Below are positions 4,543 to 30,818 of a stretch of DNA of 64,000 nucleotides, one piece after another (position 1 is the first letter of the stretch; every line of letters begins with the position of its first letter). The stretch spans positions 186,001 to 250,000 of IMG/VR virus record IMGVR_UViG_3300027985_000843, one strand, 5' to 3'. Under the pieces are notes generated by a model, which worked only from the letters and a program-made list of their open reading frames with translations, did no database searches and was not told the origin of the DNA. The position numbers and the translations under genes are program-made.

Positions 4543-5361
4543 TCATTTGGTTGGGATCGTCCAGCCCCTCGTAATGAGGAGGGCTGCTGCGACGTGCTTG
4601 CAGACTTTGTTCACCCGATCGGGATCCCGGATGTCTGGAGTCGTCGCGGTGCCGCGAGGCTTACCAAGAAGGTAGCTCTGGCCTTTGGCGTGATACTCGG
4701 GCCCCAGCCACTGCCAAGCAGGGCAGGAACAGGTCAGCTCAAGACCGAGCTTCCCGAAGGCAGTCACGTTGCCCTTCGGTCGAATGGCCTTGATCTTCAC
4801 AGCCTTGGCCCCATGCCCGCAGTCGACGCTGAACACCCATCGCAGATTCTTGATGTCCGCCCGCTTGAGGGTCGCGGTGCACGCGGCCGCCTTCTGCTGT
4901 ACCTTGCCCGAGAGGCCCTCTAGGACCTCTTCCTGGGTCGCAGCGACCCGGAGGCCCTCCGACGACTGAAAGCACCGGGAAGGGGCCCTAGAGAGCAACC
5001 AGAGGGCCACAACGAAGTCTGCTGACGCATTGTGTCTGTTCGGGATGCCGTCCCGGTAGGGGTAGTCGGTTTTCGAGGTGTCCGACGGCCCCAACCCTCT
5101 GTAGCTCGTGTCGTAGTAGGTCTCGTTGGTGTCGTACTGGCTCCGCTCCTTGGGGATATCTCGGGGCCCACGAATCCTCGTGAGGGGTTCGTCGCGGTCC
5201 GGTTGCGAGGTCGAGTCATCAACCGGCTTGTTGAACGTGCTCGTTCCCGGGATGGAGGGGTCGACACCGACCCCCTTCCCAGCAGGAGGGCCCTCGGGGA
5301 GCTTTGATTCCGCGAGGGTGTTCTGTCCGTACGGCGGGCGGCTTACGAGGGGCTGGTTCAC
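4543..5361 (-). CDS. SWIM zinc-finger protein
   Basis: LTCSCPAWQW...VCKHVAAAL (CxC...CxH), preceded by a disordered Pro/Gly-rich N-terminus. Confidence 0.7.
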   Translation of the reverse strand: MNQPLVSRPPYGQNTLAESKLPEGPPAGKGVGVDPSIPGTSTFNKPVDDSTSQPDRDEPLTRIRGPRDIPKERSQYDTNETYYDTSYRGLGPSDTSKTDYPYRDGIPNRHNASADFVVALWLLSRAPSRCFQSSEGLRVAATQEEVLEGLSGKVQQKAAACTATLKRADIKNLRWVFSVDCGHGAKAVKIKAIRPKGNVTAFGKLGLELTCSCPAWQWLGPEYHAKGQSYLLGKPRGTATTPDIRDPDRVNKVCKHVAAALLITRGWTIPTK

Positions 5362-6452
5362 TTCGCGTCAGGCGCCTCCCACGGATCCACGCTGGCGGAT
5401 TTGAACTCGTCCTTGTGCTTCTCCTTCTCGGAGTGCCACTTCGCCTTGTCTTCGGGCGACATGTTCTTGGTGGGGTCGGCCGGCTTGCCTTCCTCGAAGC
5501 GGCTCTGCTTGTCCTCTTCGTCATCCGCGACGATGTCCAGCATGGAGGCCAGGCGCATCTTCTTGGCGATCTGGGCCGGCTTGGTGTTGTAGGCACCCCG
5601 TTGCAGGTCAATGGCAGCGGTGAAGCCATCGATCCACCAAGTCCCGTACTTGCTGCTCACACGCTTGTACGCCTTTTTCGCGTCATGGATGGAGATGCTG
5701 TCGTCAGCCTTGTACGCCTTCAGGCCCGCAGCGTAACCCGCCTTGAAGTGGTCATCGTATTTGGGCTTCCCGCCCTCTTCCTCGGAAGGAAGGTCCACGG
5801 CCACCTTGGCCGTCTTCTCGACGAAGGAGATACCGCCCCACCCGAACAGTTCCTTCCGAGCAAGGGTGGCCGCCCTCAAGAGGTTCTGCACACCGCGCTC
5901 GTCGATGTTCGAGACGACTTGGGACATGTCCGTGCCATGCATCTCCTTGAGGAGGGCTTCGCCATCCCTCTTGATGACGTCGAGGGCCCCTGCGATGTTC
6001 TGGGCGAGTTTGTTCATTTTCGGATACTCCCTCTCATGCGCGGCCGCGCGAGGAATGGGAGTGTCCACGTTCCAGATGTCATCGTTGGGATTGACCATGT
6101 TGGGCTCCGAGCGTCGTTGGACTTGGCGAATGCGAACGTCTTTCAAGACGTCGTCGAGTTGGTGCACCTTCTCGGGACGCAGGTCCGCTTTGATCTCCTC
6201 GGAGTCAAGCTTGTTCGTCGCGAGAGCTGCTGCTTGAAGGGCCTTTTGCAACCTGAAGAGAATGCGAGGGATCGTGAAGATCAGATGCCCAGCAGACTCG
6301 AAGACAGCCTCTCTATGAGGGCTGTCTTCGACCAGGCGTGTGGCTTGACCTACATACCGGATGAGCTGGTCACACCGCATACGGGCATCACTCAGCTCCT
6401 CGACCAGGTAGACGGTCGCTCCAGTTGCAGCCTTCTTGCTATCCTCGGACAT
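5358..6452 (-). CDS. Putative internal head protein
   Basis: 364 aa charged protein with several K/R-x-A motifs (KKAAT, KTAKV, RLASM, KSASV). Confidence 0.55.
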   Translation of the reverse strand: MSEDSKKAATGATVYLVEELSDARMRCDQLIRYVGQATRLVEDSPHREAVFESAGHLIFTIPRILFRLQKALQAAALATNKLDSEEIKADLRPEKVHQLDDVLKDVRIRQVQRRSEPNMVNPNDDIWNVDTPIPRAAAHEREYPKMNKLAQNIAGALDVIKRDGEALLKEMHGTDMSQVVSNIDERGVQNLLRAATLARKELFGWGGISFVEKTAKVAVDLPSEEEGGKPKYDDHFKAGYAAGLKAYKADDSISIHDAKKAYKRVSSKYGTWWIDGFTAAIDLQRGAYNTKPAQIAKKMRLASMLDIVADDEEDKQSRFEEGKPADPTKNMSPEDKAKWHSEKEKHKDEFKSASVDPWEAPDAK

Positions 6453-6517
6453 GCGGATTCCTCGGTTCTCACGTCTCCCCTCGGGGAGCTATCAACCAAG
6501 GGAGCCGCACAAGTAGA

Positions 6518-8358: not shown

Positions 8359-8443
8359 TTCAATTTGTCTCCCTGTAACGAGGTTGAAGAACCCCTTACA
8401 GAGTACAAACCAACAAATGAATCACCGAACGGGACGGTTGACC

Positions 8444-8981: not shown

Positions 8982-9653
8982 TCAGGGGACCCACCACCGG
9001 ACTGGAGATTGACCCATCTTCTCAAGGGCCTCGTTGGCACGAGAGAAAGGGCGGCTCCCAAAGAAACCCGTGTGAGCGGACATGGGGCTCGGGTGAGGAG
9101 AGGCAATTACGGCGTGCCTGGTGGTGTCTAAAAGAGCCCTCTTGCTCTGGGCATCCTTGCCCCACAGGATGAACACCATGGGCTCCTGGCGGGCGTCAAG
9201 AGCCCGTATGACGGCATCGGTAAACGCCTCCCACCCCATTCCCCGATGAGAGCCGGGTTCATGGGCCCGCACGGTCAGAACGGTGTTGAGCAGGAACACG
9301 CCTTGGCGCACCCATGCCTCAAGACAGCCATGGGCAGGAGGAGCTGCCCAGCCAAGGTCGTAACACGCTTCCTTGTAGATGTTCCGAAGACTCGGAGGGA
9401 TGGGCATGTCTGCCGGGACGCTGAAGCTCAGCCCGTGAGCTTGACCTGCATTGTGGTAGGGGTCCTGCCCGAGGATGACCACTCGAACATCCTCCAGGGG
9501 CAGGTCAAAGGCATGGAAGATCATGCCGGACGGAGGGAAGACCGTGTTGTCTCTCCGGTCCGACGTGATGTACTTCACAAGATCTGTAAAATAGGTCTTC
9601 TTGAATTCGTTGGCGAGGGCTTGTTTCCAGGACGCGTGCATGCCCTGGGACAT
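8982..9653 (-). CDS. ung: Uracil-DNA glycosylase, family 1
   Basis: GQDPYH, LLNTVLTV and HPSPMS motifs (canonical HPSPLS). The true start may be ATG 9641. Confidence 0.95.
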   Translation of the reverse strand: MSQGMHASWKQALANEFKKTYFTDLVKYITSDRRDNTVFPPSGMIFHAFDLPLEDVRVVILGQDPYHNAGQAHGLSFSVPADMPIPPSLRNIYKEACYDLGWAAPPAHGCLEAWVRQGVFLLNTVLTVRAHEPGSHRGMGWEAFTDAVIRALDARQEPMVFILWGKDAQSKRALLDTTRHAVIASPHPSPMSAHTGFFGSRPFSRANEALEKMGQSPVRWWVP

Positions 9654-12108: not shown

Positions 12109-12145
12109 GATGCTGTCTCCGAGGGTAAAATTCCCACGAAGAACA

Positions 12146-12152
12146 TACACCG
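12146..12152 (-). promoter_or_regulatory. CGGTGTA element upstream of the vWA gene
   Basis: Intergenic copy, 37 nt before ATG 12108. Confidence 0.55.
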
Positions 12153-12483: not shown

Positions 12484-13365
12484 CTAGAACCGGGTGATGA
12501 CCATGCGGGTGAGACCGCGCGGGTTGAAGGCACCGATGCCCACGTTTTCGAAGCAGGAGAAGCCGATCGTGCGGGCCTTCGGGTCGTCCGCCGACAGCAC
12601 GGTCAGTTCCGTACGGACGGGGAAGCGGCCGAAGTTCTCGGGCTCTGCGCAGATGTACACGTAGCCGGCCGGAACCAGACGCGACGTGATGATCTGGGCA
12701 CCCCACAGGGTGGCCTGGAGGCCAGTCTTGAGCAGGGTCGCCTGCGACTCGATGTCGAGGATGTCACGGCCGAACTTGCGGATGTCCGCGTAGTCCACCG
12801 CGTTCATGTAGATGCGGGCGACGCGCAGGTCGTGACGCTCCACCTCGGCGAAGGCATCTGCGAGGACGCTCGGGGAGATGGGGGCGACGACGGCGACGTC
12901 CGGGTTGGTCTGGCCCGGCAGGGTGTCGAAGCCGGACACTGCGATGGAGTCCAGAACCGCGAAGACACGCTCGTCCTCCGCCGCCTGGATCTGCGCCTTG
13001 GCGAGGTCCTGGCTGCGTTCGATCAGGTCGAAGCGACGCTCCTTGATCTGGGTCAGGGGGATCTCGGGGTTCGAAGCGATCTCGAACAACGGGAAGATGA
13101 CTCGACGCGGCTTCTGCACCGCGAGGATGTTCTCACCCTCTTCGCCGACGACGAACGCCGTGACCTCGGGGTCCTTATCGTAGATGGGGAGGGCCCCATC
13201 AGGCAACCCCTCGACGGCGAAGGTCTTGCGGCCCACTGCCGTGTAGTCTCTGCGGAGACGGAGGGGCTGAATCATCGAAGCGGCAAGCTTCGCACGACCG
13301 GCGGCCGTCTTGATGTACTCCGAGATGACCTTTTGCTTTTGCTCGTTGCTGATTTGCTGGTCCAT
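12484..13365 (-). CDS. Major capsid protein, HK97 fold (Bxz1-like by recalled similarity)
   Basis: KLAASMIQPLRLRRDY..LPIYDKD..FEIASNPEI..AQIQAAEDERVF pattern. It sits downstream of protease, scaffold and decoration genes and is followed by a hairpin. Confidence 0.85.
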   Translation of the reverse strand: MDQQISNEQKQKVISEYIKTAAGRAKLAASMIQPLRLRRDYTAVGRKTFAVEGLPDGALPIYDKDPEVTAFVVGEEGENILAVQKPRRVIFPLFEIASNPEIPLTQIKERRFDLIERSQDLAKAQIQAAEDERVFAVLDSIAVSGFDTLPGQTNPDVAVVAPISPSVLADAFAEVERHDLRVARIYMNAVDYADIRKFGRDILDIESQATLLKTGLQATLWGAQIITSRLVPAGYVYICAEPENFGRFPVRTELTVLSADDPKARTIGFSCFENVGIGAFNPRGLTRMVITRF

Positions 13366-14114: not shown

Positions 14115-15350
14115 CTACCCTTCCGGGTTGAAGACGCCAGACACGTCGGGAGCCGACCGCCACAGTCCGGAGAGCGAGTCGACTTCAGAAGAAGTCGTCG
14201 ATCCCTCGGAGTGGGCACCTGCTCCACCAATCTGCGAGACACCACCGGACGGGCGGGTTCCCACCGTCCGCACGGATGCGTTTCTGACGTTGGGCGGCGG
14301 GGCCATGGGAGCCACCGGCATGCCGCTCTGGATGGCCTGGGCCTGTCGGGCTTGACGGACCTCGGGGTTGCTGGCGAACAGCGCGGAGAGGGTGTCACCC
14401 TCTTCCTGCGAGAGCATCACCTCGCCGATGTCCATCGGGGCACCTTCGAGTTGGACGTCCATCTCGGGGACCTGCTGCTGCATCGGACTGTCGTCCTGAA
14501 GCATCTGGTCGAGGATCTGGTCATCGCTCTGTTGCTGCATCTGCTGTTGCTGACCCGGCTGTTGCTGACCCAGCTGTTGCTGCACTTGCTGTTGCGGGCC
14601 CTGGCCCATCTGCTGAATGGCCTGTTGTACGGCCTGTTGCACCATCTGCTGGACCTGGTCCGCCGAGATCATCTGGTTGCCGCAGGCTTGCTTCTGGCCC
14701 TGCTGCTGACCCTGGTCGGAGTCGCCGCCCTGGTCATCCTGGTCCTGATCGTCGTTGGCTTGCTTGGCCTGTTGACCTTGCTGCTGACCCTGGTCGGAGT
14801 CGCCGCCCTGGTCATCCTGGTCCTGGTCCTGGGACGCCTTCTTGTCGCCCTTGTCGTCGCCCTTGTCGTCGCCCTTGTCGTCGCCCTTGTTCTTCTTCTG
14901 TTGCTCCAAGAACTCGGGCGGGAGCTGACCGGCGGTCTGGATGCGCTCACTCGTCTCGACAAGGTCCTTGTCGGGGAGGTGCATCAGGGCGGCGGCCTGG
15001 AATTCGAGCATCGATTCATCCGCAGAGGGGAGCATGTGACGTGCGACGCGAAGGCAGATCTCGCCCTTCTTGTGCAGGGTCTCCATGTCGACACCGGCGG
15101 TCTTGAAGGTGTCATTGCGGAAGTCGGGCATCCCGATCTCGTTCCGCCTCGTCTCGCCGCCGGACTGTTCTGCTTCCCAAGTGTCCGTCGAAGGGTGGAC
15201 GTCTTCGGCGAACTCGGAAGGACCACCGGTCGTGTACTTGTCAGCGGCCGGCTGCTGTTGCAGGTGGTCCTGGTTCATGGCTCGGGGGTCTTCTGCGACC
15301 TTACCGTTACCGGCTCCCGTAGTCCTTGCCCAAGTGGTGCGCTTACGCAT
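14115..15350 (-). CDS. Probable scaffolding protein
   Basis: Lies between the protease and the decoration/MCP genes. Gln/Asp-rich low complexity. Start moved to MRKRTTW (AGGAG upstream). Confidence 0.55.
   Translation of the reverse strand: MRKRTTWARTTGAGNGKVAEDPRAMNQDHLQQQPAADKYTTGGPSEFAEDVHPSTDTWEAEQSGGETRRNEIGMPDFRNDTFKTAGVDMETLHKKGEICLRVARHMLPSADESMLEFQAAALMHLPDKDLVETSERIQTAGQLPPEFLEQQKKNKGDDKGDDKGDDKGDKKASQDQDQDDQGGDSDQGQQQGQQAKQANDDQDQDDQGGDSDQGQQQGQKQACGNQMISADQVQQMVQQAVQQAIQQMGQGPQQQVQQQLGQQQPGQQQQMQQQSDDQILDQMLQDDSPMQQQVPEMDVQLEGAPMDIGEVMLSQEEGDTLSALFASNPEVRQARQAQAIQSGMPVAPMAPPPNVRNASVRTVGTRPSGGVSQIGGAGAHSEGSTTSSEVDSLSGLWRSAPDVSGVFNPEG
14701..14890. repeat. Intragenic repeats in the scaffold gene
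   Basis: 47-bp direct repeat at 14701-14747 and 14779-14825 (encoding QDQDDQGGDSDQGQQQ), plus about four 12-bp units encoding GDDK. Confidence 0.85.
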
Positions 15351-15393
15351 GATGTCACTTCTCCTGCCCATGGAGGGCGTATAAAGAGAATCA

Positions 15394-16884
15394 CTACGCC
15401 CGGGAGCCCAGGTCGTACAATCTTCCCTTTGCCAACAGAGTGTCCTCTTCAGACCTCATCAATTCCCTACCCAATACCCGACGGCACGCTGCCAGGTAGC
15501 TCTTTTCATTTTCATAGGGGGCGAAGCCTCCGACAGCGACAATTGCACGATACAGGCGAGATTCGCCTGCTACCTTTGGAGTACCTTGGAACGTGTCGAG
15601 GAACCGAGACATTGCCAGGAAGTCCACACCCTTCAAACGGTCTGATGCTTGAACACACTTCCAGCCACCCCTGCGGTATAGAAGGAATCCAAACAAGACG
15701 CGGCGGGCAGTGTCACTACTACCCAACTTCGCAACGACCGCTCTGGAGATGCCTACCCATTGAGGGCTGGACATTGCTTCCTTCCTCAAGGTCTCATTGA
15801 GGTTTTCCTGAAGGTCAGCGTCAGGAGTCTCTCCGTCGCCCATCTCGTTGCGGACCTTTTTCAAGGCTTTTTCACGAAGGTACTCGGCGACGTCATTGAC
15901 TGCATCTTGCAGTGGGTCCTTCTGAGGTGCAGGTGTGGAAGAACCACCCTGACCTTGACCTTGACCCTGACTGTCATCACCGAAGTCAAAAGCTGCACGA
16001 AGGCTTGCAGCCCTCTGCATGACGCCTTTGTCGGCCATCCTCGTGGGTTGAGAAAAGGCAACCTGAATACGTGACCCGAGTGCCTTGACTTGGTCAGGGG
16101 TCAGGATGTTTCGAAGCACCGCACCGGTAAAGGCGGGGTTGGCTACCCATGACGCCTCGATGAACTTGACACTTCCAGGCTCGGCGTTGATGTGACCACA
16201 GATCTCAGCGATCCGACGATTCTTGCCAAGCTCGTCGGTGAAGGAGTTGCCCTTCTGGTACCGAATGTGTGAGCACAGCTGCGTCTCGTCCTCGGCCTTG
16301 TTTCCACACTTGGAGCAGAGGGTGAAGGCGACTTGACAACCCATGGACAGGGTTTGAAGTTCACCTGACTCAACTGCCGCAATGAGCGGCCTGTGCTTGC
16401 GGTCGGTAGCAACGAGGATATCGACATAGATCGAGTCCCCGATGTCCCTCGCAGCTGCGTCGAGGATCTTGCCCTTGGACAGCTCGGGGATCTGCAAGTG
16501 CTCGACGTAGTTCTCACCACCAGTGAAGGTGCGATAGGTCGCGAGCAGAAGCTTTCGCTCCCAGCTGTCATGGTTGTTGTTGACGTACTGACTCGTCTCG
16601 GGCTTGATCAGAAAGTCAGCGTACTGACGATTGATCTGGAAGCCGTCCACCATCTGTGTGCCCAACTTGACATTGGGTGGCGCCTCCGTGTCCACGGAAG
16701 CAATGATGGTGCAATGACTCAGCATGTACTGGTCAGGATGGAACTGCTGAAGCACGACCTCCGACGCCTGTCGAGTGCCGAAGGCCGAGCCGAGTTGCAT
16801 CGCTGTGGCCCGGACCGAGTCCCACACATCCATGGTGATGGAGGGCTTGATGACGGCCGCGTTGGCGTACTTCAGGAATGCCAT
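15394..16884 (-). CDS. Prohead (capsid maturation) protease with Zn-ribbon insert
   Basis: NNNHDSW..FTGGENYVEH (His) and LSMGC (Ser), then CSKCGN..CSHI. Located upstream of scaffold and MCP. Confidence 0.75.
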   Translation of the reverse strand: MAFLKYANAAVIKPSITMDVWDSVRATAMQLGSAFGTRQASEVVLQQFHPDQYMLSHCTIIASVDTEAPPNVKLGTQMVDGFQINRQYADFLIKPETSQYVNNNHDSWERKLLLATYRTFTGGENYVEHLQIPELSKGKILDAAARDIGDSIYVDILVATDRKHRPLIAAVESGELQTLSMGCQVAFTLCSKCGNKAEDETQLCSHIRYQKGNSFTDELGKNRRIAEICGHINAEPGSVKFIEASWVANPAFTGAVLRNILTPDQVKALGSRIQVAFSQPTRMADKGVMQRAASLRAAFDFGDDSQGQGQGQGGSSTPAPQKDPLQDAVNDVAEYLREKALKKVRNEMGDGETPDADLQENLNETLRKEAMSSPQWVGISRAVVAKLGSSDTARRVLFGFLLYRRGGWKCVQASDRLKGVDFLAMSRFLDTFQGTPKVAGESRLYRAIVAVGGFAPYENEKSYLAACRRVLGRELMRSEEDTLLAKGRLYDLGSRA

Positions 16885-17338: not shown

Positions 17339-18046
17339 TCACCACTCCACAGGGTTGCCGTCGGGCCCGAAGATGTCGTCTCGCTTGATGACGAACAGGT
17401 CGACCGGACACACAAACAGGTGCATCTTCTGGCCTTCCCGCATCTTGTAGGTAGTGCGACGCATAGCCGCCCCGCAACGAGGACAACTGGGGCACTTGGC
17501 CTCAAGCTCTCGGCGGGTGGCACGATGTTGACGGTTCTGGGCCATCCAGTAGGTAGCTGTCTTGGCGACGGCTGCCTGTAAGTAGAGGTTGAGTGTGTTG
17601 GATGCGAAACGGTAGAACTTGTCTACCTCGTCCCGGAGCGCCTCATCCTGCGAGTAAGAGGCATACCGATGCCACAGCTCGTTGTACGCCTGAATCTCGT
17701 TGGCTTTTCGATTGAAGAGTCGAGCGAGTTCCTTGTGAAACCCGTCCGGGACTTCTGTCGTCCTCCACTTGTTCATGGATGCCTGTTTGGCGACATCCAA
17801 TCCAGGGTGGTAGCCGAACGTGAGAGAGGGGGGCAGGTAGTACCCGAAACGAGGATCCACCTTCAGCAGCTCGTCGGGGAAGACACGCTCCGTCCCGAAA
17901 GGCCACTGCACATCCACGACGCCCAACCCCGGCAACGACGCAAGCACTCGACCGGAGTAGGGCGAGATGCCCTGACCCGCGAGCACTCGCTGGACGATGT
18001 CGCCAACGGCAAAGTCCTTTGCTAGCTGCCAGTAGTCGATCGTCAT
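17339..18046 (-). CDS. Head-module protein with C-terminal Zn ribbon
   Basis: SH3/KOW-like N-terminus (VGDIVQRV..GRVLA..VDVQWP) and C-terminal CPRC..CPVD. Confidence 0.6.
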   Translation of the reverse strand: MTIDYWQLAKDFAVGDIVQRVLAGQGISPYSGRVLASLPGLGVVDVQWPFGTERVFPDELLKVDPRFGYYLPPSLTFGYHPGLDVAKQASMNKWRTTEVPDGFHKELARLFNRKANEIQAYNELWHRYASYSQDEALRDEVDKFYRFASNTLNLYLQAAVAKTATYWMAQNRQHRATRRELEAKCPSCPRCGAAMRRTTYKMREGQKMHLFVCPVDLFVIKRDDIFGPDGNPVEW

Positions 18047-20974: not shown

Positions 20975-22807
20975 TCAGAACCGACCCCCGCCGCCCTCAT
21001 CGCCACCCGGGGCCTTCATTTTGAGGCTCATGTACTTGGCGACTCTCTCGACGATGTCCGTGTTTTCAGCAAGCATACGGCCGACCTCGGAGTAGACGCT
21101 TCGCAGGACCTCGTTGAAGGTGGCGTCATTCACGGTAAGCATATCGTCTTCGAGCTGGACTCTGGTGTCGTCCGGATCGATTCCGAGAGCTTCGAGAACG
21201 AGGCCCACGCCAATAGAGCCCTTCGTGTACATGTTGAAGATGGCATCGAAGTAGTCTTGGCTGTCCCGCAGCGGCTGACGCGTGAAGCTCAGTTTGGGAT
21301 ACAGCACGACTTCCTGGCCCCACTTGTCTGTCTCGACGAAGCCCATGCGGCGAGCCACCGGCTTGAACAAGAACTCCTCGACGTATTCCTGGAGGCGCTC
21401 TCGCAGGTGGATGTACCGCTGGTTGATGACTTCGAGCTTGAGACGATCCCCGCTGTAGAGCGACTCGCCACTCATGAGAGACTCAGTGACCCCCAACCCA
21501 GTGATGAGCCGGCGTTCCGCCTGTTCATACTCCACGCTGAGGTCCAGGAGACGATCACGCGCCCCCATTTCCTCCCAGTGAATCTCGTAGTTGGCAACGA
21601 TCGTGTAATCAGGGTCGACGAGAGACAGGTCCACCTGCTCACGAAGGTCCTCGACATCCACGTCACTCAGACCCTCAGCCCACACGATGCGCTTCGGCGT
21701 CATGGCTCTGGAAGCAATGCTTGTCTGAGCCTGACGGAGCTTGTCACGGTAGATCAACGTGTGCATGCATCGCCGTAGGATGCTCTGCCCTAGCTCTTCG
21801 TCGGCCCCCTTGCGGCCGGACAACAGATAGACGAAGCTGCCCTCATCAGGGTCTGTGCCGAGAGGGATCAGACGATTCTGCTCGATGTACAGCCGGACCT
21901 CTTCCGGAATCTCGTTCAGAATTTCCTCAGCCGTGGGATCCCCCGAGTGAGCTTGTTCTACCAGCCGGCGATCTCGGTCGGAAGGGATCAACTCGACCTT
22001 CGACTTGTTCGAGAACGGGTAGGCCGTGATTTTCACCTGGTCGATGGGCAGAACGATGAGCTTGTCCCAGCCCATGTAGTGCTTCTGGTAGTAGGCCAGC
22101 TCCTGGTCCTCGCGGTCGGTCTTCTCGACCCAGGTGTACTCTTCTTGCTCGACAGGAGTGCCATCGTCTCGCAAGACAGACGTGACTCCCTTGTGTACGT
22201 CATGCCCGATCTCTTGAGGCACGTCGACGGTACCATCCTCCGCGAAGATCGCGCACACACCGTCCAGCCAGTAGTGGTGCGTCATCGTGATGAGGCTGCT
22301 GAACATGCGGGTGTGATCACACATCCGCTGGAATCTGCTGAGGATGTACTTGCTGTAGTCGTGAGGGTCCTCGAAGCCAGCCGGACAGGTCCGGGGCTTC
22401 GGTGGTGTGAGTCTGACCTTCGACAAGGGCAGCTCGGTGTGCAGGTCGATGGCCTGACCGACGATCTCATCGTTGTTGTAGAAATGCCGGTAGATCTCCC
22501 TCCACTCACGGATGGATTGCGGCATCTCAAGGAAGTCAGTCGAGAGCTGGACCGAGAAGAAGTTGTCGTTCCCGCTCATGACGGTGTTCATGCCCATGCC
22601 GCCACCGGAGTAGCCGCCACCACCGCCACCGAAACAGCTGGCCTTCTTGGTCTCTTTCGCCTGTTGGCGAGCGAGCCTTTCCTTGGGGGTGAGCTGATTC
22701 GAAAACTTCTGAGCCACGTAGGGTTTCACCTGGGGTGTGGTTCTGACTCGGGTCTGAACCAGATACTGGGGGGCTCGACCCGCATTGGTGAATGGGCTGT
22801 CAGGCAT
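20975..22807 (-). CDS. Portal protein
   Basis: STDFLEMP..YRHFY..IVGQAIDLHTELPLSK..SILRRCMH..MTPKRIV pattern. 610 aa, between terminase and protease. Confidence 0.75.
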   Translation of the reverse strand: MPDSPFTNAGRAPQYLVQTRVRTTPQVKPYVAQKFSNQLTPKERLARQQAKETKKASCFGGGGGGYSGGGMGMNTVMSGNDNFFSVQLSTDFLEMPQSIREWREIYRHFYNNDEIVGQAIDLHTELPLSKVRLTPPKPRTCPAGFEDPHDYSKYILSRFQRMCDHTRMFSSLITMTHHYWLDGVCAIFAEDGTVDVPQEIGHDVHKGVTSVLRDDGTPVEQEEYTWVEKTDREDQELAYYQKHYMGWDKLIVLPIDQVKITAYPFSNKSKVELIPSDRDRRLVEQAHSGDPTAEEILNEIPEEVRLYIEQNRLIPLGTDPDEGSFVYLLSGRKGADEELGQSILRRCMHTLIYRDKLRQAQTSIASRAMTPKRIVWAEGLSDVDVEDLREQVDLSLVDPDYTIVANYEIHWEEMGARDRLLDLSVEYEQAERRLITGLGVTESLMSGESLYSGDRLKLEVINQRYIHLRERLQEYVEEFLFKPVARRMGFVETDKWGQEVVLYPKLSFTRQPLRDSQDYFDAIFNMYTKGSIGVGLVLEALGIDPDDTRVQLEDDMLTVNDATFNEVLRSVYSEVGRMLAENTDIVERVAKYMSLKMKAPGGDEGGGGRF

Positions 22808-26562: not shown

Positions 26563-26565
26563 GGG

Positions 26566-27255
26566 TCACCTCACGATCTCGTTGGCCTTGTCCTCCCACC
26601 CTTCCAGCCTGGTCTCCAGTCTGTTCCAGATGAGGTCGAACTGTTCCTCGGGCAGCATGTCGTGCAGCACATCCCGGAACACTTCGAGGAACATGGCGAA
26701 GACTCGCTGAAGTCTCTCGTCTCGTAGGTTCAACGTCGAAGCGTTGAAGTGAGCGATCTCTTTCTCGATGCTCGCAACTTCCTTGAGGGCCGCGATACGT
26801 CGGGACGTGATCTGCGAGATCTCCTTGGCCGTGTTGCGACGCTTCTGTAGCTCCAGCTGTTGAAACTCCAGACTGGCGGCAGCCATTGCGATCTGCTCTT
26901 GAAGTGCCTTGAGCTTCAGCAGCGAGGGGGCATCCCCTCGGACAGACTTGACGACGTCGTTGTTGTCCATCATCTCGGCCTGACGCCGCATCATCTCTTC
27001 GTGATACTGGACGTCGTCCCAGTCCGGGCGACGGTCAGTCTTGAGGGGCGCACCCCTCCGACGCTTGGGAGCGGTTTGGATTGGGACCACGGCGGCGGTC
27101 TTCAAAACCTGCTGCGTGTGGCCGCTGGGTTCGACAGGGTCAGACGCTTCTGCCTCGGCTAGCTCCCCGAGGATCTCGTTGACCTTCTCGTCAGTGATGG
27201 CGGTGTTTCCGTCAACCATGACTCTACTTCCCTTCCGGTCCGCCTTCTCCTCCAC
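26566..27255 (-). CDS. Probable terminase small subunit
   Basis: Helical 229-aa ORF immediately upstream of terL. The call rests on position. Confidence 0.45.
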   Translation of the reverse strand: MEEKADRKGSRVMVDGNTAITDEKVNEILGELAEAEASDPVEPSGHTQQVLKTAAVVPIQTAPKRRRGAPLKTDRRPDWDDVQYHEEMMRRQAEMMDNNDVVKSVRGDAPSLLKLKALQEQIAMAAASLEFQQLELQKRRNTAKEISQITSRRIAALKEVASIEKEIAHFNASTLNLRDERLQRVFAMFLEVFRDVLHDMLPEEQFDLIWNRLETRLEGWEDKANEIVR

Positions 27256-27613
27256 CTTCCGTTCGGATCAGATACTGGCTGAGGTTGTCGACCGTCTCGT
27301 GGCCCTTGTCCTTCTGGATCTGTCGATCCACGGCATCCGAGAGGTCTTTGCCCGTCTCAGCAAATTCACGAACCCCCACGTTCTTTGGCAGTGGGGGGTA
27401 AAACACGTCTCGCGGGGTTACGTCATCCTTATCGGGTTTGGTGATGCCGTCTCCCTTGCTCTTGGACTTGCCCTCGTCTTCAATGGTCTTCCTACCAACA
27501 CCTTTCGGCTTGTTGATAGGTCTCACCATGTCACGCACGTGTTTGCGTTGTCCGGGCTGCTGGTCTGCCTGGAGAAGGTATCGGGCAACAACGCGAGCCG
27601 TGAGCTTGTTCAC
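27224..27613 (-). CDS. Small putative internal protein
   Basis: Begins MNKLTARVVARYL, followed by a disordered charged body. Confidence 0.55.
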   Translation of the reverse strand: MNKLTARVVARYLLQADQQPGQRKHVRDMVRPINKPKGVGRKTIEDEGKSKSKGDGITKPDKDDVTPRDVFYPPLPKNVGVREFAETGKDLSDAVDRQIQKDKGHETVDNLSQYLIRTEGGGEGGPEGK

Positions 27614-29595
27614 AGCCTGATCTCCTGACCACCGAACTCGATATCCAGATCCGGTGTGGTGTCGGCGGCATTCAGTTCGATGGAGGATGCCTGGTGTTGC
27701 AGCTCATACTCGTGCATCATGGCGAGGCCGTTGTGCATGAGCTGGTCGAACCGGACCTCAGTGCTGGCACCGGACTCCAGGACGGCTTTCTGCTCCGCTG
27801 CCTTGTCGATGTAGGGGGGCTCAACGACAAGTTGCTTGTTCAGCACGGAGCACACACCAGGCATCGACTGGTGTACACACGAGCCGCAAGCGGAGCCCAC
27901 CTTGGCAAACTTGACGGACGCTCGCGGACGAAGAAGTCTCGAAGCCGTCGCACAGCCGTGACCGTAGTCGTCGTAGACGGAGGGGTCGACGTACTTGATG
28001 CCCTGAAGCCCTTGCTCGGCGAGCACAGCGGCAAGCTCGTCCTTGGTCGCGACCAGGTCGCGCGTCTCAAACCTGCTCTTGAGGACGGTGCCGAGCTGCG
28101 AGCCGTACAGGCCCTCGTTCATGTACCGCTGGGCAGCGAGAACGATCTCTCGCTTGGTGAGATCACTCGTTCCCGCCTGGCGACTGGTGTTGCCATAGAA
28201 GCCCTTCTCGATGACGCCGCGAAGGCCAACGGAGAAGACTGGTGGCTGGATGTTCGTGGCCGCCCGATGAATGGCCTTGAGCTGTTCGGTGGGCGTGGAC
28301 CCCCACTTCTGACGACCAGCGACAGTAGGCAGGCGCCCGGCCATCTTGTGCTCGTCGATGACAGCTGCCACCGTCTCTTGCGTCAGGATGTCTTCCTTCG
28401 TGGCGACAAGCTTGCGGCCGTACATGAGGCACCGACCGACCTTGGCAAAGATGCAGCTCGTGCACTTCTCTCCGGCCACGATAGCTCGAACCTTTGATCC
28501 GTGCTTGTTGAGGAAGTCTGCACCAACCCGGCAATCGTCGAAGCTCGTCTGTGTACTGTAGACGGCCCCATACAGGCCCGCTTCCTTGAAGACGGGTTCC
28601 CATTGATGGCGAAGGGCCTGGAGGTCTTCCTTGCCAAAAGCGAGCTTCAGAGCATGCACCAGCTCGGCTTCGCCGCGACCCTTGAGCATCTCTCGACGGA
28701 GCAACGACACGATGGGCCGAGCCTTGGCAGCGGCGAGCTTCTGGGCAGCGTCCTCTTCCTTTTCCTTCGCCAACTGCGCGGCCGCAGCAAGTGTTTCCGT
28801 CGAAGCCATTTTGTCGAGAGGCTTCTTGGGCTGGGGCTGTGCTCGACCTGTGAAGGCTTCCCTGGCTTGTGCCTGCCCGAGGATGGCGAGCTGGATACGC
28901 CGCTTCGGATCGGTTGCCTTCTCGGAGGCTGTGAGCCCCTTGGCTGCCTGCGTTCTCTCGACCGCCTCGGCCAGCTCTTCGGTGTAGGGAACGTTGACCA
29001 GCACCTGCTTGTGGAAGATCCCGCAGTGGGAGGTGCCGCTCGGAAGCTTCTGTCTGTGCAGGCACTCGACACAGGCTTTCTTGGCGATGATATACTTGGC
29101 CTCGGGGGCATGCCTCCGCACGAACTCCGTCGACGTGCGACTGTTCACGTTGGCGCAGTCCGGGAAGTCGGAGGAGTAGACATACAATCCTCCAAGTAGC
29201 CCTCTCTCGGCCAAGACGGGCCTCAGAAGGTCCGCCGCCTGCTTGATGGTGTCCGCATCGTAGCGGCTCAGCAAAGACTCTCTGATGGCCTTTGCGTCGT
29301 ACGTACGCACCATGATGAGCCGGGCTGTCCGAAGAAGGTCTTCGGGAACTTTCCGAACGGGCCCTCGCGGACCGAGGTCCACCATCGTCTTCGGCGCCCC
29401 TGTGTTGGGAACGAGACGCGAGGCCGGTGTGTCGTCATGCCGCCACTGGGCTTCGAGGTCGGGCGCGATGTCGAGGTTCTGCTTCGGGAGCCGATCCAGC
29501 TTCCGGTATTCTTCCTCGTTCACATCCAACCAGTCCAGGTTGCTGACTCCGCCTTCCTTCAGGAGGTTGGAGATGTCGCCAAGTTCGCCTGCCAT
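27610..29595 (-). CDS. Protein with three Cys-rich repeats
   Basis: Start moved to MAGELG (overlaps the upstream TAA). Three copies of E-x-G-L-x-G-x2-Y...C...CxxC...C. Confidence 0.7.
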   Translation of the reverse strand: MAGELGDISNLLKEGGVSNLDWLDVNEEEYRKLDRLPKQNLDIAPDLEAQWRHDDTPASRLVPNTGAPKTMVDLGPRGPVRKVPEDLLRTARLIMVRTYDAKAIRESLLSRYDADTIKQAADLLRPVLAERGLLGGLYVYSSDFPDCANVNSRTSTEFVRRHAPEAKYIIAKKACVECLHRQKLPSGTSHCGIFHKQVLVNVPYTEELAEAVERTQAAKGLTASEKATDPKRRIQLAILGQAQAREAFTGRAQPQPKKPLDKMASTETLAAAAQLAKEKEEDAAQKLAAAKARPIVSLLRREMLKGRGEAELVHALKLAFGKEDLQALRHQWEPVFKEAGLYGAVYSTQTSFDDCRVGADFLNKHGSKVRAIVAGEKCTSCIFAKVGRCLMYGRKLVATKEDILTQETVAAVIDEHKMAGRLPTVAGRQKWGSTPTEQLKAIHRAATNIQPPVFSVGLRGVIEKGFYGNTSRQAGTSDLTKREIVLAAQRYMNEGLYGSQLGTVLKSRFETRDLVATKDELAAVLAEQGLQGIKYVDPSVYDDYGHGCATASRLLRPRASVKFAKVGSACGSCVHQSMPGVCSVLNKQLVVEPPYIDKAAEQKAVLESGASTEVRFDQLMHNGLAMMHEYELQHQASSIELNAADTTPDLDIEFGGQEIRL

Positions 29596-30818
29596 TACAC
29601 TGTCCTCGTTGTTCCCGGGGCCGTCAGCGGCAACCATGGGGTTGATAGGTCCTCGTGAACGTAGCCAGTATCGATATCAACACCTGTGTCCACCTCCCCG
29701 GGAGCGTTGTCCCCGTCCGGGAGGGTGTCGGCCCATGCTTCGGCCGTTTGCACCAGGTTGCCCTTGGCGCCTTCGTATTCGTCTCGACGGGCCACAGGGT
29801 CATCGTAGTCGCCCGGGAGGCCCGTTTCGGCGTGACGCTCGTTGATGCTCACATCCACGACGGGCGTATCACCAGAAGATTGTGGAGGTGCCCCCGGGAG
29901 ACCGCTGTGCGGGCCCCAGATGCCCTTTCCGTTGCCTTCGTCGGACGGGTTGGCGTAACCACCAGCCCCCTGCCCACGAGCCCCGTATCCGAGGCCCCAG
30001 TCCCAAGCATCGGTGGGCGTGTCGTCAGACGGCAGGGCTGTCTGGGCCCACTGCTGGGAAGACGCCTCCAGGTCACTGTAGTCGTACTGAGGCCCTTCAA
30101 GGCCCCAGTCGTCTTGGACAGCATCTTCCTGAGGATTGAACGATCCGTGAGGGCCGTCACCTCCCATGGGGTCGCGATTGTCCACGCGAGGGCCGCCCGT
30201 CTGAGCGTCAAGTCCTGCTAGAGCGTCGCCCTCACCAAGGAACCGGGCCACAACACTCGACGCAGAAGCTTGCTTCGTGGGATTGGGCCTCTCGGGTTCT
30301 TGGGGCGGGGCGTCCCCACCATCTGGCAGTTCCGACTTGGTGTCCTTCGGGCCGTCGTTTTCTTTCTCGATCTTTTCGATTTCGTCCTCGGCCTCTTCCT
30401 CGGGGTTGTCGAGAACGTGCTTGGACTCTTCCACGAACCTCTCGACGTCTTCCTGTTCGTTGTCGTCCAGGAGGGCCAGCTTCGGCTTCCAGTGGGGAGC
30501 GCTGATCTCGTCATAGAGCGTGTCAGAGATGGCACTGAGACGTTCACAGACGTCGTACAGGTCCTTACGAACCTGGGACACCTCGCGGATGTAGCCCCTA
30601 CCACCCAAACGGCCATCCGGACTGATGGTGGCGGACTTGAGTCGCGTGAAGTACCGGTAGGCTGTGAGGGCGTGCCCGAGGGCGACGCTGCAAGCCCACA
30701 GGGTCTGCGACATCGGCTTGAGCGCTTTCGGGTCGTACGAGTGATCTTTGGGGATCTCTCGCTTCTGAGCCGGCGGGGGTGGCTCCTCGAAGGCTGCTGT
30801 CTTGTCCCAGGTATCCAT
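29595..30818 (-). CDS. Acidic, partly disordered putative internal protein
   Basis: KTAAF and KQASASSVVARFL motifs. Asp/Gly/Pro-rich C-terminal half. Confidence 0.6.
   Translation of the reverse strand: MDTWDKTAAFEEPPPPAQKREIPKDHSYDPKALKPMSQTLWACSVALGHALTAYRYFTRLKSATISPDGRLGGRGYIREVSQVRKDLYDVCERLSAISDTLYDEISAPHWKPKLALLDDNEQEDVERFVEESKHVLDNPEEEAEDEIEKIEKENDGPKDTKSELPDGGDAPPQEPERPNPTKQASASSVVARFLGEGDALAGLDAQTGGPRVDNRDPMGGDGPHGSFNPQEDAVQDDWGLEGPQYDYSDLEASSQQWAQTALPSDDTPTDAWDWGLGYGARGQGAGGYANPSDEGNGKGIWGPHSGLPGAPPQSSGDTPVVDVSINERHAETGLPGDYDDPVARRDEYEGAKGNLVQTAEAWADTLPDGDNAPGEVDTGVDIDTGYVHEDLSTPWLPLTAPGTTRTV

What the first reader, a model, noticed from the sequence alone, without database searches (positions are those of the whole stretch)
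4543..30818. K/R-x-A-(S/A/G/T) motif repeated across head-module proteins: candidate protease code
Seen: RQASE and RAASL flank the protease domain itself. The scaffold has KTAG, KKASQ, KQAN, KQAC and RNASV. Other examples are portal KKASC, MCP KTAAG, 17339 KQASM/KTATY, 16884 KIASP, 18056 KTARV/KMASS, 22800 RTASL, 27610 KMAST/RQAGT, 29595 KTAAF/KQASA and 5358 KKAAT/RLASM/KSASV. They fall mainly in linkers or near termini. Established: HK97/assemblin-fold Ser-His proteases process many head proteins, and herpesvirus assemblin cuts Ala-Ser bonds. Inference: the protease at 15394..16884 cuts after K/R-x-A, and the motif marks which unknown ORFs are head-internal cargo.
Basis: partly seen in the sequence, partly recalled or inferred. 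Interest (0 to 1): 0.6.

Follow-up and report, generated by a model that had tools for sequence, protein, structure and literature searches.

The report
Lys/Arg-x-Ala head-protease cleavage code
In this 372-kb phage and its distant relatives (including cultivated phage G), the short motif Lys/Arg-x-Ala-(Ser/Ala) is specifically over-represented in head-assembly proteins and brackets the head protease domain. It is therefore most likely that protease's cutting signal, a different "code" from the Glu-based one known in T4 and phiKZ-type giant phages, but no cleavage has been observed.

Summary
The motif is real and non-random, and the cleavage reading is supported only in part.

**Enrichment in the window**
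- [KR]-x-A-[SAGT] occurs 50 times in ORFs of 4543-30818 against about 27 expected.
- The replication block has 25 against 27.

**Relatives**
- In 46 non-redundant scaffold orthologues, K-x-A is the single most over-represented residue pair. [KR]xA is 2.6x and [KR]xA[SAGT] 4.3x expectation; reversed or shifted controls are at most 1.07x.
- [KR]-x-A is near-invariant at both edges of the protease domain: R38-Q-A and R291-A-A. The second is followed by a hypervariable linker.
- The same edge sites occur in Tunturi_5 gp331 and phage G gp19.
- Unbiased scans of the phage G and Tunturi_5 genomes put K-x-A / K-x-x-S at rank 1-2 only in their head modules.
- The same scan recovers T4's known I/L-x-E code.

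**Limits**
- P1' small is a preference, not a rule.
- Single hits (portal, 18056, 27610) are at chance density and not conserved.
- The 17339 hits lie in a HAT-like repeat.
- The scissile bond is inferred.

It is a new variant of a known kind. Phage G virion mass spectrometry could test it.

The parts
15394..16884 (-). Prohead protease ORF (496 aa): protease domain about residues 41-290, then linker and a C-terminal domain (about 330-496).
   Evidence: phrog_18299 'head maturation protease' 1.6e-13 and phrog_2774 1e-24. tblastn to annotated proteases of Tunturi_5, Rhodococcus E3 and Gordonia phages. Best structural matches of 48,161 chains are T4 gp21 (Z 6.8) and VZV protease (Z 5.9), on a low-confidence model.
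16498..16500 (-). His129, candidate catalytic His.
   Evidence: Invariant in 27 orthologues. Lies 5 residues before the segment that hhalign aligns to HK97 gp4, whose His65 lies 4 residues before the aligned segment. The alignment probability is low.
16345..16347 (-). Ser180 (TLSMGC), candidate catalytic Ser.
   Evidence: Invariant. Aligned by hhalign to Ser114 of HK97 gp4 (GMSVGF).
16267..16317 (-). CxxC...CxH zinc-ribbon-like insert inside the protease domain (C190, C193, C204, H206).
   Evidence: Near-invariant columns. Sub-threshold Zn_ribbon Pfam hits in 13/27 members.
16762..16773 (-). R38-Q-A40|S41, candidate N-terminal autoprocessing site just before the conserved fold start (VVLQxFxPxxYxLSHCTI).
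   Evidence: [KR]xA kept in 21/27 nr orthologues with flank identity 0.33. Equivalent GKTA|A in Tunturi_5 gp331 and VKTA|A in phage G gp19. Falls in the pLDDT<50 segment 33-45.
16864..16872 (-). K5-Y-A7, a second conserved N-terminal [KR]xA.
   Evidence: Kept in 24/27. LKTA|N in Tunturi_5 and VKIA|G in phage G.
16003..16014 (-). R291-A-A293|S294, candidate C-terminal autocleavage site at the end of the protease domain.
   Evidence: [KR]AA kept in 27/27 nr orthologues with variable P1' (R16, S3, K2, F2, Y1). It is followed directly by a hypervariable, indel-rich linker (57 inserted alignment columns). KKVA|S in Tunturi_5, whose protease ORF ends 20 aa later. EKVA|S / LKIA|S in phage G and RKQA|Y in E3.
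14115..15371 (-). Scaffold-like protein (418 aa, Q/D/G-rich, no family hit) with 10 [KR]xA sites: KVA24, KTA90, RVA108, KKA177, KQA203, KQA227, RQA339, RQA342, RNA363, RSA405.
   Evidence: Lies between the protease and the MCP. It is the genome's most enriched protein (10 vs 2.9). Family of 47: 554 vs 213 (2.6x), [KR]xA[SAGT] 4.3x, 46/47 above expectation, controls at most 1.07x, 542/554 unique contexts.
14274..14285 (-). R363-N-A365|S366, conserved site at the junction of the hypervariable spacer and the conserved C-terminal tail.
   Evidence: R-T-A-S-T-R-T-V-G-T-R-P consensus in 31 sequences; Ala at P1 is at least 90% conserved. Often preceded by a second K-Q-A a few residues upstream.
14118..14276 (-). 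Conserved scaffold C-terminal tail (S366-G418: STRTVGTRP...LWxSAPDVxxxF), presumed shell-binding end.
   Evidence: Invariant T46, G48, T49, P51, G54, V55, W81, P85, F91 in alignment A2. The function is inferred.
5358..6452 (-). Unknown 364-aa protein, candidate processed head-internal protein. Has an N-terminal K-x-A-[SAG] leader site and a C-terminal module RFEEGKPADPT...F-K-S-A|S.
   Evidence: 14 vs 7.1 [KR]xA. Family [KR]xA[SAGT] is 2.7x. The leader site is conserved just before the domain start VYLVEEL. The module is present 1-4 times per orthologue, and 41/44 copies end in F-K-x-A.
6423..6437 (-). K6-K-A-A-T10 N-terminal leader site of ORF 5358-6452.
5391..5501 (-). Module RFEEGKPADPTKNMSPEDKAKWHSEKEKHKDEF-KSA|S (residues 318-354).
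4939..4950 (-). R138-V-A|A141 in ORF 4543-5361 (weak SWIM zinc-finger hit), a possible site.
   Evidence: [KR]xA kept in 23/24 with flank identity 0.29. The family as a whole is not enriched (1.06x).
12484..13365 (-). Major capsid protein (293 aa); KTA19 and KLA26 lie in the N-arm and are probably not cut.
   Evidence: Sites kept in Tunturi_5 but not in phage G gp27 (ETEEG, VALAQA). The PDB 6WKK chain sequence starts at the equivalent N-terminus.
17339..18046 (-). Conserved 235-aa protein with RKA113, RYA127, RFA146, KTA162 and a C-terminal Cys-rich ribbon. The motif hits are probably structural.
   Evidence: Sites are positionally conserved inside a helical repeat. Sub-threshold HAT-repeat match over residues 94-176.
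20975..22807 (-). Portal protein; KKAS54 is not conserved.
   Evidence: phrog_16240 4.7e-24. Motif kept in 2/12.

Best explanation
The window carries the head-assembly module of a 372-kb phage of the phage-G-like lineage.

**The enzyme.** The product of 15394-16884 is an HK97/assemblin-fold Ser-His prohead protease, with probable catalytic residues His129 and Ser180.

**The signal.** Its recognition signal is Lys/Arg at P3, any residue at P2 (Thr, Gln, Lys and Leu preferred) and Ala at P1. Ser, then Ala, is preferred at P1'.

**What it does inside the prohead (all inferred).**
- It trims itself at R38-Q-A| and R291-A-A|, freeing the catalytic domain from its C-terminal targeting domain.
- It chops the Q/D/G-rich scaffold (14115-15371) at about 10 sites into peptides with a median of about 20-35 aa. 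This includes a conserved cut, R-N/T-A|S, that detaches the conserved C-terminal tail.
- It processes at least one internal protein family (5358-6452) at a short N-terminal leader and after each 'EEGKPADPT...F-K-x-A' module.

**Shown.** Motif enrichment, its positional conservation, its head-module specificity in three to four divergent lineages, and the protease fold and invariant residues.

**Inferred.** That the motif is cut at all, that the bond is Ala|P1', and the fates of the fragments.
For: 1. **Window statistics.** 50 vs about 27 in the finding region; 25 vs about 27 in the replication block. The scaffold is the top-enriched protein of 417 called genes.
2. **Scaffold orthologues, window sequence excluded.** 544 vs 211. 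A de novo scan of all residue pairs at gaps 1-4 puts K.A first (400 vs 131, z 27). The logo gives P2 T/Q/K/L and P1' S 4.0x.
3. **Controls on the same set.** A.[KR] 0.81, [KR]A 0.93, [KR]..A 0.95, [DE].A 0.77, [AGS].E 0.96, [LIV].E 0.86. 46/47 sequences exceed expectation. 542/554 sites have unique contexts, and 32% of all K/R carry Ala at +2 against 12.6% Ala overall.
4. **Both protease-domain boundaries carry the motif.** 21/27 and 27/27 nr orthologues. The second sits at the start of a hypervariable linker. The same three sites occur in Tunturi_5 gp331 and phage G gp19, and RKQA|Y follows the E3 protease domain.
5. **Independent genomes.**
   - Phage G head module 40/17.3 against 149/141 outside. 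The first 20-kb bin is 33/11 and most other bins are near expectation (380-400 kb: 14/7).
   - Tunturi_5 71/38.7 against 1.25x outside.
   - De novo, K.A is rank 1 of 911 (phage G, 1-22 kb). K..S and K.A are ranks 1 and 2 of 1177 (Tunturi_5 module). Elsewhere in those genomes K.A ranks 141 and 445.
   - The scaffold and ejection proteins of these phages are not BLAST-detectable homologues of the window's, so the signal is not simple inheritance.
6. **Method validated.** The same scan on T4 gp20-24 ranks I.E first of 660. [LI].E is 2.35x in core proteins against 1.10x in controls. This matches the published gp21 motif (PMC5694885).
7. **Fold and residues.** T4 gp21 and VZV protease are the two best of 48,161 chains. 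H129 and S180 are invariant. S180 aligns to HK97 gp4 Ser114.
8. **Depletion where it would be expected.** The motif is depleted in the probable decoration protein family (0.39x) and in UDG (0.28x).
Against: - No cleavage product has been observed. I found no mass-spectrometry or N-terminal data for any member of this lineage.
- The protease model is poor (pLDDT 54.6). Pfam and PDB sequence searches do not find a peptidase family. The hhalign match to HK97 gp4 has negligible probability.
- The protease-scaffold complex prediction gave no verdict.
- Orthologues are related, so z-scores across a family are inflated.
- Module boundaries in phage G and Tunturi_5 were chosen after looking, although the 20-kb bins show the same thing.
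- Gene calls are my own crude ones.
- HK97 gp4 itself cuts after Lys (FNK|S), so the scissile bond could lie elsewhere in the motif.
- Some conserved [KR]xA sites are clearly structural: RIAE in the protease core 27/27, and the 17339 family.
Confidence: 0.62

Rival explanations
1. K/R-x-A-(S) is a non-proteolytic assembly signal. It would be a short linear docking motif by which scaffold, protease and internal proteins bind the inner shell surface, the portal or one another, and it is not cut.
For: The same statistics fit any head-specific linear motif. The motif is part of a longer conserved module in the 5358 family (EEGKPADPT...FKxA) and abuts the conserved scaffold tail. Both could be binding elements.
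Against: Ten or more copies scattered through low-complexity spacers at non-conserved positions look like degradation sites rather than docking sites. The placement exactly at both boundaries of the protease domain, followed by a hypervariable linker, parallels the known C-terminal autocleavage of the phiKZ and SPN3US proteases (PMC5694885). The T4 cleavage motif leaves the same statistical footprint.
Confidence: 0.15
2. The motif is a cleavage signal, but either the bond or the enzyme differs from the reader's model. The cut could come after the Lys/Arg, as in HK97 gp4 (K|S), or a host protease could be responsible.
For: HK97 gp5 is cut at FNK|SLG (the mature N-terminus is from my own knowledge). 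Sequence statistics cannot place the scissile bond.
Against: The hosts span Bacillota (phage G), Acidobacteriota (Tunturi_5) and Actinomycetota (Myrna, E3), whereas the protease is the shared element. Fixed Ala two residues after K/R with a Ser preference next to it resembles the assemblin (V/L/I)-x-A|S site, and the fold matches assemblin.
Confidence: 0.13
3. The pattern is a by-product of composition, low-complexity repeats, helical sequence periodicity or post-hoc motif picking, with no specific function.
For: The scaffolds are low-complexity and contain tandem units. The 17339 family shows that conserved R-[YF]-A-S can be structural. In the window alone K.A ranks only 19th of 1001 pair patterns.
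Against: The block-shuffle expectation keeps local composition. Reversed and shifted controls are flat. 542/554 contexts are unique. De novo scans that exclude the window sequence, and scans in two other genomes, put the same pair first. There is no enrichment outside head modules.
Confidence: 0.07

Closest known systems
T4 gp21 prohead protease and its (L/I)-x-E cleavage motif
   Same: A prohead serine protease of the assemblin fold, and the best structural match (5jbl, Z 6.8). It uses a three-residue motif with fixed P3 and P1, present many times in scaffold and core proteins and in the protease itself. My scan recovers that motif with the same effect size (2.35x).
   Different: P1 is Glu and P3 is aliphatic in T4. 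Here [LIV].E is 0.86x in scaffolds, and the motif is basic P3 with Ala P1. There is no detectable sequence similarity to Pfam peptidase families.
phiKZ gp175 / 201phi2-1 / SPN3US gp245 giant-phage proteases, motif (A/S/G)-x-E with P1' Ser preference
   Same: The idea of a 'protease code' that identifies processed head and ejection proteins in jumbo phages. They also show C-terminal autocleavage of the protease at its own motif and extra sites inside propeptides (PMC5694885, PMC10052503).
   Different: A different motif: [AGS].E is 0.96x here. It is also a different phage lineage, and in those phages the sites were mapped by mass spectrometry, whereas none are here.
Herpesvirus assemblin (maturational protease), sites (V/L/I)-x-A|S
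   Same: The fold: VZV protease Z 5.9 and HCMV protease Z 4.2. Ala at P1 and Ser preferred at P1'. Self-release from a protease-scaffold precursor. The site consensus is from my own knowledge.
   Different: P3 is hydrophobic in herpesviruses and Lys/Arg here. The catalytic triad composition was not established here. The homology is very distant.
HK97 gp4 (MEROPS S78) prohead protease
   Same: Gene order is portal-protease-(scaffold)-MCP. A local alignment places S180 on Ser114 (GMSVGF) and H129 near His65.
   Different: The alignment is statistically insignificant. HK97 cuts its MCP delta domain after Lys103 (FNK|S). Here there is a separate scaffold and a short MCP without a delta domain.
Bacillus phage G gp19 / Tunturiibacter phage Tunturi_5 gp331 / cluster C mycobacteriophage (Myrna gp97) and Rhodococcus E3 gp77 proteases
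   Same: True homologues of the window protease, with homologous MCPs. Phage G and Tunturi_5 have the same K-x-A sites at the protease-domain edges and head-module enrichment of K-x-A-S; E3 has them too, and Myrna only at the N-terminal edge.
   Different: The protease is a stand-alone 287-300 aa ORF in Tunturi_5 and phage G. It is fused to a roughly 600-900 aa scaffold-like region in E3 and Myrna. The signal is weaker in the actinophages. No cleavage data were found for any of them.

Membership tests
Assemblin-fold (clan SH) prohead serine proteases (HK97 gp4 / T4 gp21 / herpes assemblin) | Characteristic beta-barrel protease fold | tested here: inconclusive
   The AF2 model has only pLDDT 54.6. 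Foldseek gives no significant hit, with T4 gp21 at rank 4. An exhaustive VIA-align search ranks T4 gp21 (Z 6.8, 124 aa) and VZV protease (Z 5.9) first and second of 48,161 chains. Z<8 is not decisive by the tool's own note.
Assemblin-fold (clan SH) prohead serine proteases (HK97 gp4 / T4 gp21 / herpes assemblin) | Invariant catalytic Ser and His | tested here: met
   S180 and H129 (also H57 and H164) are invariant in 27 orthologues. S180 aligns with HK97 Ser114, and H129 lies one residue off the His65 register. The catalytic role itself was not tested.
Assemblin-fold (clan SH) prohead serine proteases (HK97 gp4 / T4 gp21 / herpes assemblin) | Profile match to a curated protease family | tested here: inconclusive
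   PHROG phrog_18299 'head maturation protease' 1.6e-13. There is no Pfam peptidase hit even at E<=1 and no PDB sequence hit.
Assemblin-fold (clan SH) prohead serine proteases (HK97 gp4 / T4 gp21 / herpes assemblin) | Gene sits between the portal and the scaffold/MCP genes of a head module | tested here: met
   The order is portal 20975-22807, protease 15394-16884, scaffold-like 14115-15371, MCP 12484-13365, all on the minus strand. The same order is seen in Tunturi_5, phage G, Myrna and E3.
Giant-phage 'protease code' systems (T4, phiKZ, SPN3US) | Short motif enriched in head or core proteins relative to the rest of the proteome | tested here: met
   Positive control on T4.
Giant-phage 'protease code' systems (T4, phiKZ, SPN3US) | Motif present at the protease's own C-terminal processing site | tested here: met
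   [KR]AA is kept in 27/27 at the domain end before a hypervariable linker. Actual autocleavage was not tested.
Giant-phage 'protease code' systems (T4, phiKZ, SPN3US) | P1 = Glu (x-x-E motif) | tested here: not met
   [AGS].E is 0.96x and [LIV].E is 0.86x in scaffold orthologues. This works like those systems but uses another code.
Giant-phage 'protease code' systems (T4, phiKZ, SPN3US) | Mature protein termini mapped to the motif by MS or Edman | not testable with these tools
   No proteomic data are held. The literature searches found none for this lineage.
Herpesvirus assemblin-type site (V/L/I)-x-A|S | Ala at P1 and Ser at P1' | tested here: inconclusive
   Ala is fixed two residues after K/R, and Ser is 4.0x enriched at the next position. 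That the bond between them is the one cut is not shown.
Herpesvirus assemblin-type site (V/L/I)-x-A|S | Hydrophobic P3 | tested here: not met
   P3 is K (399) or R (146) by the definition of the enriched pattern. No hydrophobic-x-A pair appeared among the top de novo pairs listed.

The most novel reading that the evidence does not exclude
A whole, widespread lineage shares one previously undescribed maturation code, basic-x-Ala|Ser. The lineage includes soil 'huge phages' whose MCP is 91-97% identical across more than 500 contigs, cultivated phage G, Tunturi_5 and, more weakly, cluster C actinophages. The code would be an assemblin-like Ala|Ser specificity in bacteriophages. Some head-internal proteins of this lineage (the 5358-6452 family) would then be polyproteins, built from 1-4 cassettes each ending in a conserved 'EEGKPADPT...F-K-x-A' tag and released by the prohead protease. 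If so, the motif plus this tag would let packaged or ejected cargo be read directly from metagenomic huge-phage genomes.
Probability: 0.35. Interest if true: 0.75.

Novelty: new variant of a known kind. Interest (0 to 1): 0.6.

Why it matters
Most head and ejection proteins of huge phages have no recognisable function. In T4, phiKZ and SPN3US, the protease motif has been the key to finding which proteins are packaged, processed and injected.

A different code that can be read computationally, valid for the phage-G-like lineage, would give the same handle on hundreds of uncultivated 200-500 kb phage genomes. It would also add a phage counterpart to the herpesvirus Ala|Ser specificity, and so bear on how substrate specificity evolved within the assemblin fold.

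It can be tested now, because phage G and Tunturi_5 are in culture.

Tried and rejected
- **Nucleotide and protein searches of the phage collection.** Megablast of the protease-scaffold DNA and tblastn of the scaffold gave no match.
- **Family and sequence searches for the protease.** Pfam gave no peptidase family, only weak zinc-ribbon hits. A PDB profile search gave nothing relevant.
- **Protease structure.** AF2 with a 27-row alignment gave a poor model (pLDDT 54.6). Foldseek against PDB gave nothing significant.
- **hhalign against HK97 gp4.** Probability 0.6%, used only as a register hint.
- **Complex prediction of protease 41-293 with the scaffold tail.** Score 0.00, no verdict. This is not evidence either way.
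- **Atlas search for ORF 5358-6452.** No usable hit.
- **The search for related loci for ORF 27610-29637.** It returned a single orthologue, so ORFs 26566-30818 could not be tested for conservation beyond one pairwise comparison.
- **Literature.** Seven searches and several papers gave no cleavage-site data for phage G, Myrna, E3 or Tunturi_5. The phage G structure paper (JMB 2020) is not held, and no supplements are held for the 2025 phage G multi-omics paper.
- **Rejected: the T4/phiKZ-type x-x-E code operates here.** Ratios were 0.86-0.96.
- **Rejected: the MCP N-terminal KTAA/KLAA are cleavage sites.** They are not conserved in phage G, and they lie in the N-arm.
- **Rejected: the 17339-18046 hits mark cargo.** They lie in a HAT-like structural repeat.
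- **N-terminal leader scan.** A genome-wide scan for N-terminal [KR]xA leaders gave only 21 against about 14 expected, using unreliable start codons.
- **Not used.** No alternative genetic code and no read-mapping tools were used.

Full report
**Context**

The window is bases 186001-250000 of a single 371,739-bp contig with 59% G+C. It is a huge phage genome.

In the finding's range nearly all genes are on the minus strand. Family scans give:
- portal 20975-22807 (phrog_16240, 4.7e-24)
- large terminase 24556-26562
- head maturation protease 15394-16884 (phrog_2774 1e-24; phrog_18299 1.6e-13)
- major capsid protein 12484-13365 (phrog_2522 3e-53; PF05065)

A replication block starts near 32306 and includes a sigma factor, clamp loader and primase.

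ORF 14115-15371 lies between the protease and the capsid genes. It is Q/D/G-rich with no family hit.

The capsid protein is 39% identical to gp27 of Bacillus phage G (PDB 6WKK) and 49% identical to that of Tunturiibacter phage Tunturi_5. More distant homologues occur in cluster C mycobacteriophages and Rhodococcus phage E3. The protease has the same set of relatives.

| Region | [KR]-x-A-[SAGT] observed | Expected |
|---|---|---|
| Called genes of 4543-30818 | 50 | 26.4 (whole-protein shuffle, z 4.9); 27.3 (25-residue block shuffle, z 4.5) |
| Replication block | 25 | 25-27 |
| Rest of the genome | 1.10x | |

.

For the looser [KR]-x-A, the scaffold is the most enriched of all 417 called proteins (10 vs 2.9). 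ORF 5358-6452 is fourth (14 vs 7.1).

Within the window alone the signal is modest. The pairs K..S, AS and K.A rank 8, 10 and 19 of 1001. The motif was also picked after reading the region.

**Comparative test**

The capsid protein retrieved 531 related stretches in IMG/VR, and 80 loci with up to 10 kb of flank on each side were kept. The flanking genes are only 35-65% identical to the window's, which gives real power.

In 46 non-redundant scaffold orthologues, excluding the window's own:
- [KR]-x-A occurs 544 times against 211 expected.

On the 47-sequence set that also includes the window's scaffold:
- A scan of every residue pair at spacings 1-4 puts K-x-A first by a wide margin (400 vs 131). 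R-x-A is also enriched (154 vs 80).
- The site logo shows T/Q/K/L at the middle position and Ser (4.0x), then Ala, after the Ala.
- Controls are flat: A-x-[KR] 0.81, [KR]-A 0.93, [KR]-x-x-A 0.95, [DE]-x-A 0.77, [KR]-x-G 0.57. The T4/phiKZ-type [LIV]-x-E and [AGS]-x-E are 0.86 and 0.96.
- [KR]-x-A-[SAGT] is 4.3x and [KR]-x-A-[other] is 1.9x.
- 46 of 47 sequences exceed expectation.
- The sites are not copies of one repeat: 542 of 554 have unique contexts. All three thirds of the protein are enriched. 32% of all Lys/Arg are followed by x-Ala, against an Ala frequency of 12.6%.
- Positions turn over while density is kept. This is what is expected of degradative cleavage sites.

**Protease boundaries**

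[KR]-x-A is kept at three places in the alignment of protease orthologues:

| Site (window residues) | Kept in nr orthologues | Context |
|---|---|---|
| 5-7 | 24/27 | N-terminus |
| 38-40 (R-Q-A|S) | 21/27 | Just before the conserved start of the fold |
| 291-293 (R-A-A|S) | 27/27 | End of the protease domain |

At 291-293 the next residue varies (R, S, K, F, Y) and the alignment then collapses into a hypervariable, indel-rich linker. Sites 38-40 and 291-293 lie in low-confidence, presumably flexible, segments of the model.

The same three sites are present in Tunturi_5 gp331 (LKTA|N, GKTA|A, KKVA|S), whose ORF ends 20 residues after the last one. They are also present in phage G gp19 (VKIA|G, VKTA|A, EKVA|S, LKIA|S). 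E3 gp77 has RKQA|Y straight after its protease domain.

C-terminal self-cleavage at the enzyme's own motif is established for the phiKZ and SPN3US proteases (PMC5694885).

**Independent genomes**

I fetched Tunturi_5 whole and 400 kb of phage G, called genes crudely, and repeated the analysis.

| Genome | Head module | Outside the module | De novo rank in module | Rank elsewhere |
|---|---|---|---|---|
| Phage G | 33 vs 11 in the first 20 kb (terminase to scaffold); 1-40 kb is 2.31x | 1.06x; most other 20-kb bins near expectation (380-400 kb: 14 vs 7) | K.A rank 1 of 911, with K..S and AS also in the top eight | K.A rank 141 of 1404 |
| Tunturi_5 | 1.84x | 1.25x | K..S and K.A ranks 1 and 2 of 1177 | K.A rank 445 of 1325 |

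. In Tunturi_5 the most enriched protein of the genome is gp328, annotated as an ejection protein and lying three genes upstream of the protease (15 vs 4.1). The scaffold-position protein gp332 has 20 [KR]-x-A against 8.2.

These scaffold and ejection proteins are not BLAST-detectable homologues of the window's. The shared motif is therefore not simple inheritance of sequence.

Myrna's protease-scaffold fusion gp97 shows 31 vs 17.3.

**Positive control**

The same scan on T4 gp20-24 ranks I-x-E first of 660 pairs. [LI]-x-E is 2.35x in gp67/68/21/22 and 1.10x in control proteins. This recovers the experimentally known gp21 motif, with an effect size like the one seen here.

**The enzyme**

- Pfam and PDB sequence searches fail, and the AF2 model is poor.
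- Even so, an exhaustive structural comparison ranks T4 gp21 (Z 6.8) and varicella-zoster protease (Z 5.9) first and second of 48,161 chains, with HCMV protease fifth.
- H129 and S180 are invariant.
- A statistically weak local hhalign alignment places S180 on the catalytic Ser114 of HK97 gp4, and H129 within one residue of the His65 register.
- A near-invariant CxxC...CxH insert suggests a zinc ribbon inside the domain.

**Other proteins**

*ORF 5358-6452.* This family is the most interesting of the rest.
- A K-x-A-[SAG] site sits just before the conserved start of the domain, behind a variable short leader.
- A conserved module 'RFEEGKPADPTxNMSxEDAxxW...KDxF-K-x-A' occurs one to four times per orthologue. 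Each copy is followed by another segment, which gives a polyprotein-like layout.
- 41 of 44 copies end in F-K-x-A.

*Scaffold.* R-[TN]-A-S marks the junction between the hypervariable spacer and the conserved tail STRTVGTRP...LWxSAPDVxxxF.

*Other reader examples do not hold up.*
- Portal KKAS is kept in 2/12.
- The three 18056 sites are kept in 0/12.
- The 27610 sites are lost in the only orthologue found.
- The MCP sites are absent from phage G and lie in the N-arm.
- The 17339-18046 sites (RYAS, RFAS, KTAT) are positionally conserved inside a helical repeat with sub-threshold HAT similarity, and so are probably structural.
- The probable decoration protein family and UDG are depleted in the motif (0.39x and 0.28x).

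**Mechanism and limits**

The best reading is a prohead protease that recognises basic-x-Ala. It would trim itself, fragment the scaffold (median predicted fragments of 18-35 residues) and process some internal proteins. This parallels T4 and phiKZ-type phages, but with a different code that resembles the herpesvirus (V/L/I)-x-A|S site.

Not shown: that any site is cut, which bond is cut, and which enzyme cuts. HK97 gp4 cuts after Lys, FNK|S.

Further limits:
- The complex prediction gave no verdict.
- No proteomic evidence exists in the literature I could reach.
- Z-scores across orthologues are inflated by relatedness.
- Gene calls in the three genomes are my own simple ones.
- Module limits in the two outside genomes were set after inspection of the annotation.

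**Verdict**

It is a new variant of a known kind of system, and is directly testable in phage G or Tunturi_5.

Noticed in passing
window 12484-13365 (-): The 293-aa major capsid protein is 91-97% identical in the 80 loci kept, out of 531 IMG/VR stretches that encode a relative. These come from contigs up to 529 kb. The adjacent protease, scaffold and other head genes in the same loci are only about 35-65% identical. This is an unusually frozen capsid protein in an otherwise fast-evolving module.
   Followed up: partly
window 16267-16317 (-), protease residues 190-206: A near-invariant CxxC...CxH zinc-ribbon-like insert sits inside the prohead protease domain. It is also visible in Tunturi_5, phage G, Myrna and E3 (ICSxCGN motif). 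I do not know of this in HK97 or T4 proteases.
   Followed up: partly
window 5391-5501 (-) and loci L016, L018, L021, L028, L082: The conserved module 'RFEEGKPADPTxNMSxEDAxxW...KDxF-K-x-A' is repeated 1-4 times in orthologues of ORF 5358-6452, giving a polyprotein-like architecture. It has no family hit in Pfam, PHROGs or the Atlas.
   Followed up: partly
window 29595-30818 (-); genome C1:257344-258021 (+) and C1:288555-289778 (-), outside the window: Three proteins begin with a similar leader: D-[YW]-D-[KR]-T-A-[AS] (MDTWDKTAAF, MNIYDYDRTAAA, MADYDRTASV). This may be a shared N-terminal targeting and cleavage leader. The one in the window is kept as KTAS in its single orthologue (L125).
   Followed up: no
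window 8982-9653 (-) and 9667-12150 (-): A uracil-DNA glycosylase superfamily protein (PF03167, 1.5e-19) and an 827-aa protein lie in the structural gene block just downstream of the capsid gene. The 827-aa protein has a sub-threshold VWA match and a strong phrog_2426 match.
   Followed up: no
It overlaps the 3' end of 17339-18046 by 157 nt and has one orthologue among 83 loci. In most relatives the 17339-type gene abuts the protease directly, so the roughly 450-nt stretch looks like a window-specific insert.
   Followed up: partly
locus L123 (Mycobacterium phage Myrna gp97) and L124 (Rhodococcus phage E3 gp77): Myrna gp97 is annotated 'tape measure', but its N-terminus is the homologue of this prohead protease, fused to a long scaffold-like region. 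E3 gp77 has the same fusion. So the same parts occur as a stand-alone protease ORF (Tunturi_5, phage G), as a protease with a roughly 200-aa C-terminal domain and a separate scaffold ORF (this window), and as one fused protease-scaffold ORF (Myrna, E3).
   Followed up: partly
window 14529-14595, 14837-14890 (scaffold) and 20019-20095, 20261-20314 (ORF 18056-20953): Short in-frame tandem DNA repeats (periods 12, 15 and 24) encode DDKG, QQV-type and KPAEKKPKK peptide repeats in the scaffold and in the 965-aa protein downstream of the portal gene.
   Followed up: no
window 36341-36856 (-): A transposase-like ORF (phrog_513, 8e-11) is embedded between the clamp-loader and primase genes of the replication block.
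   Followed up: no
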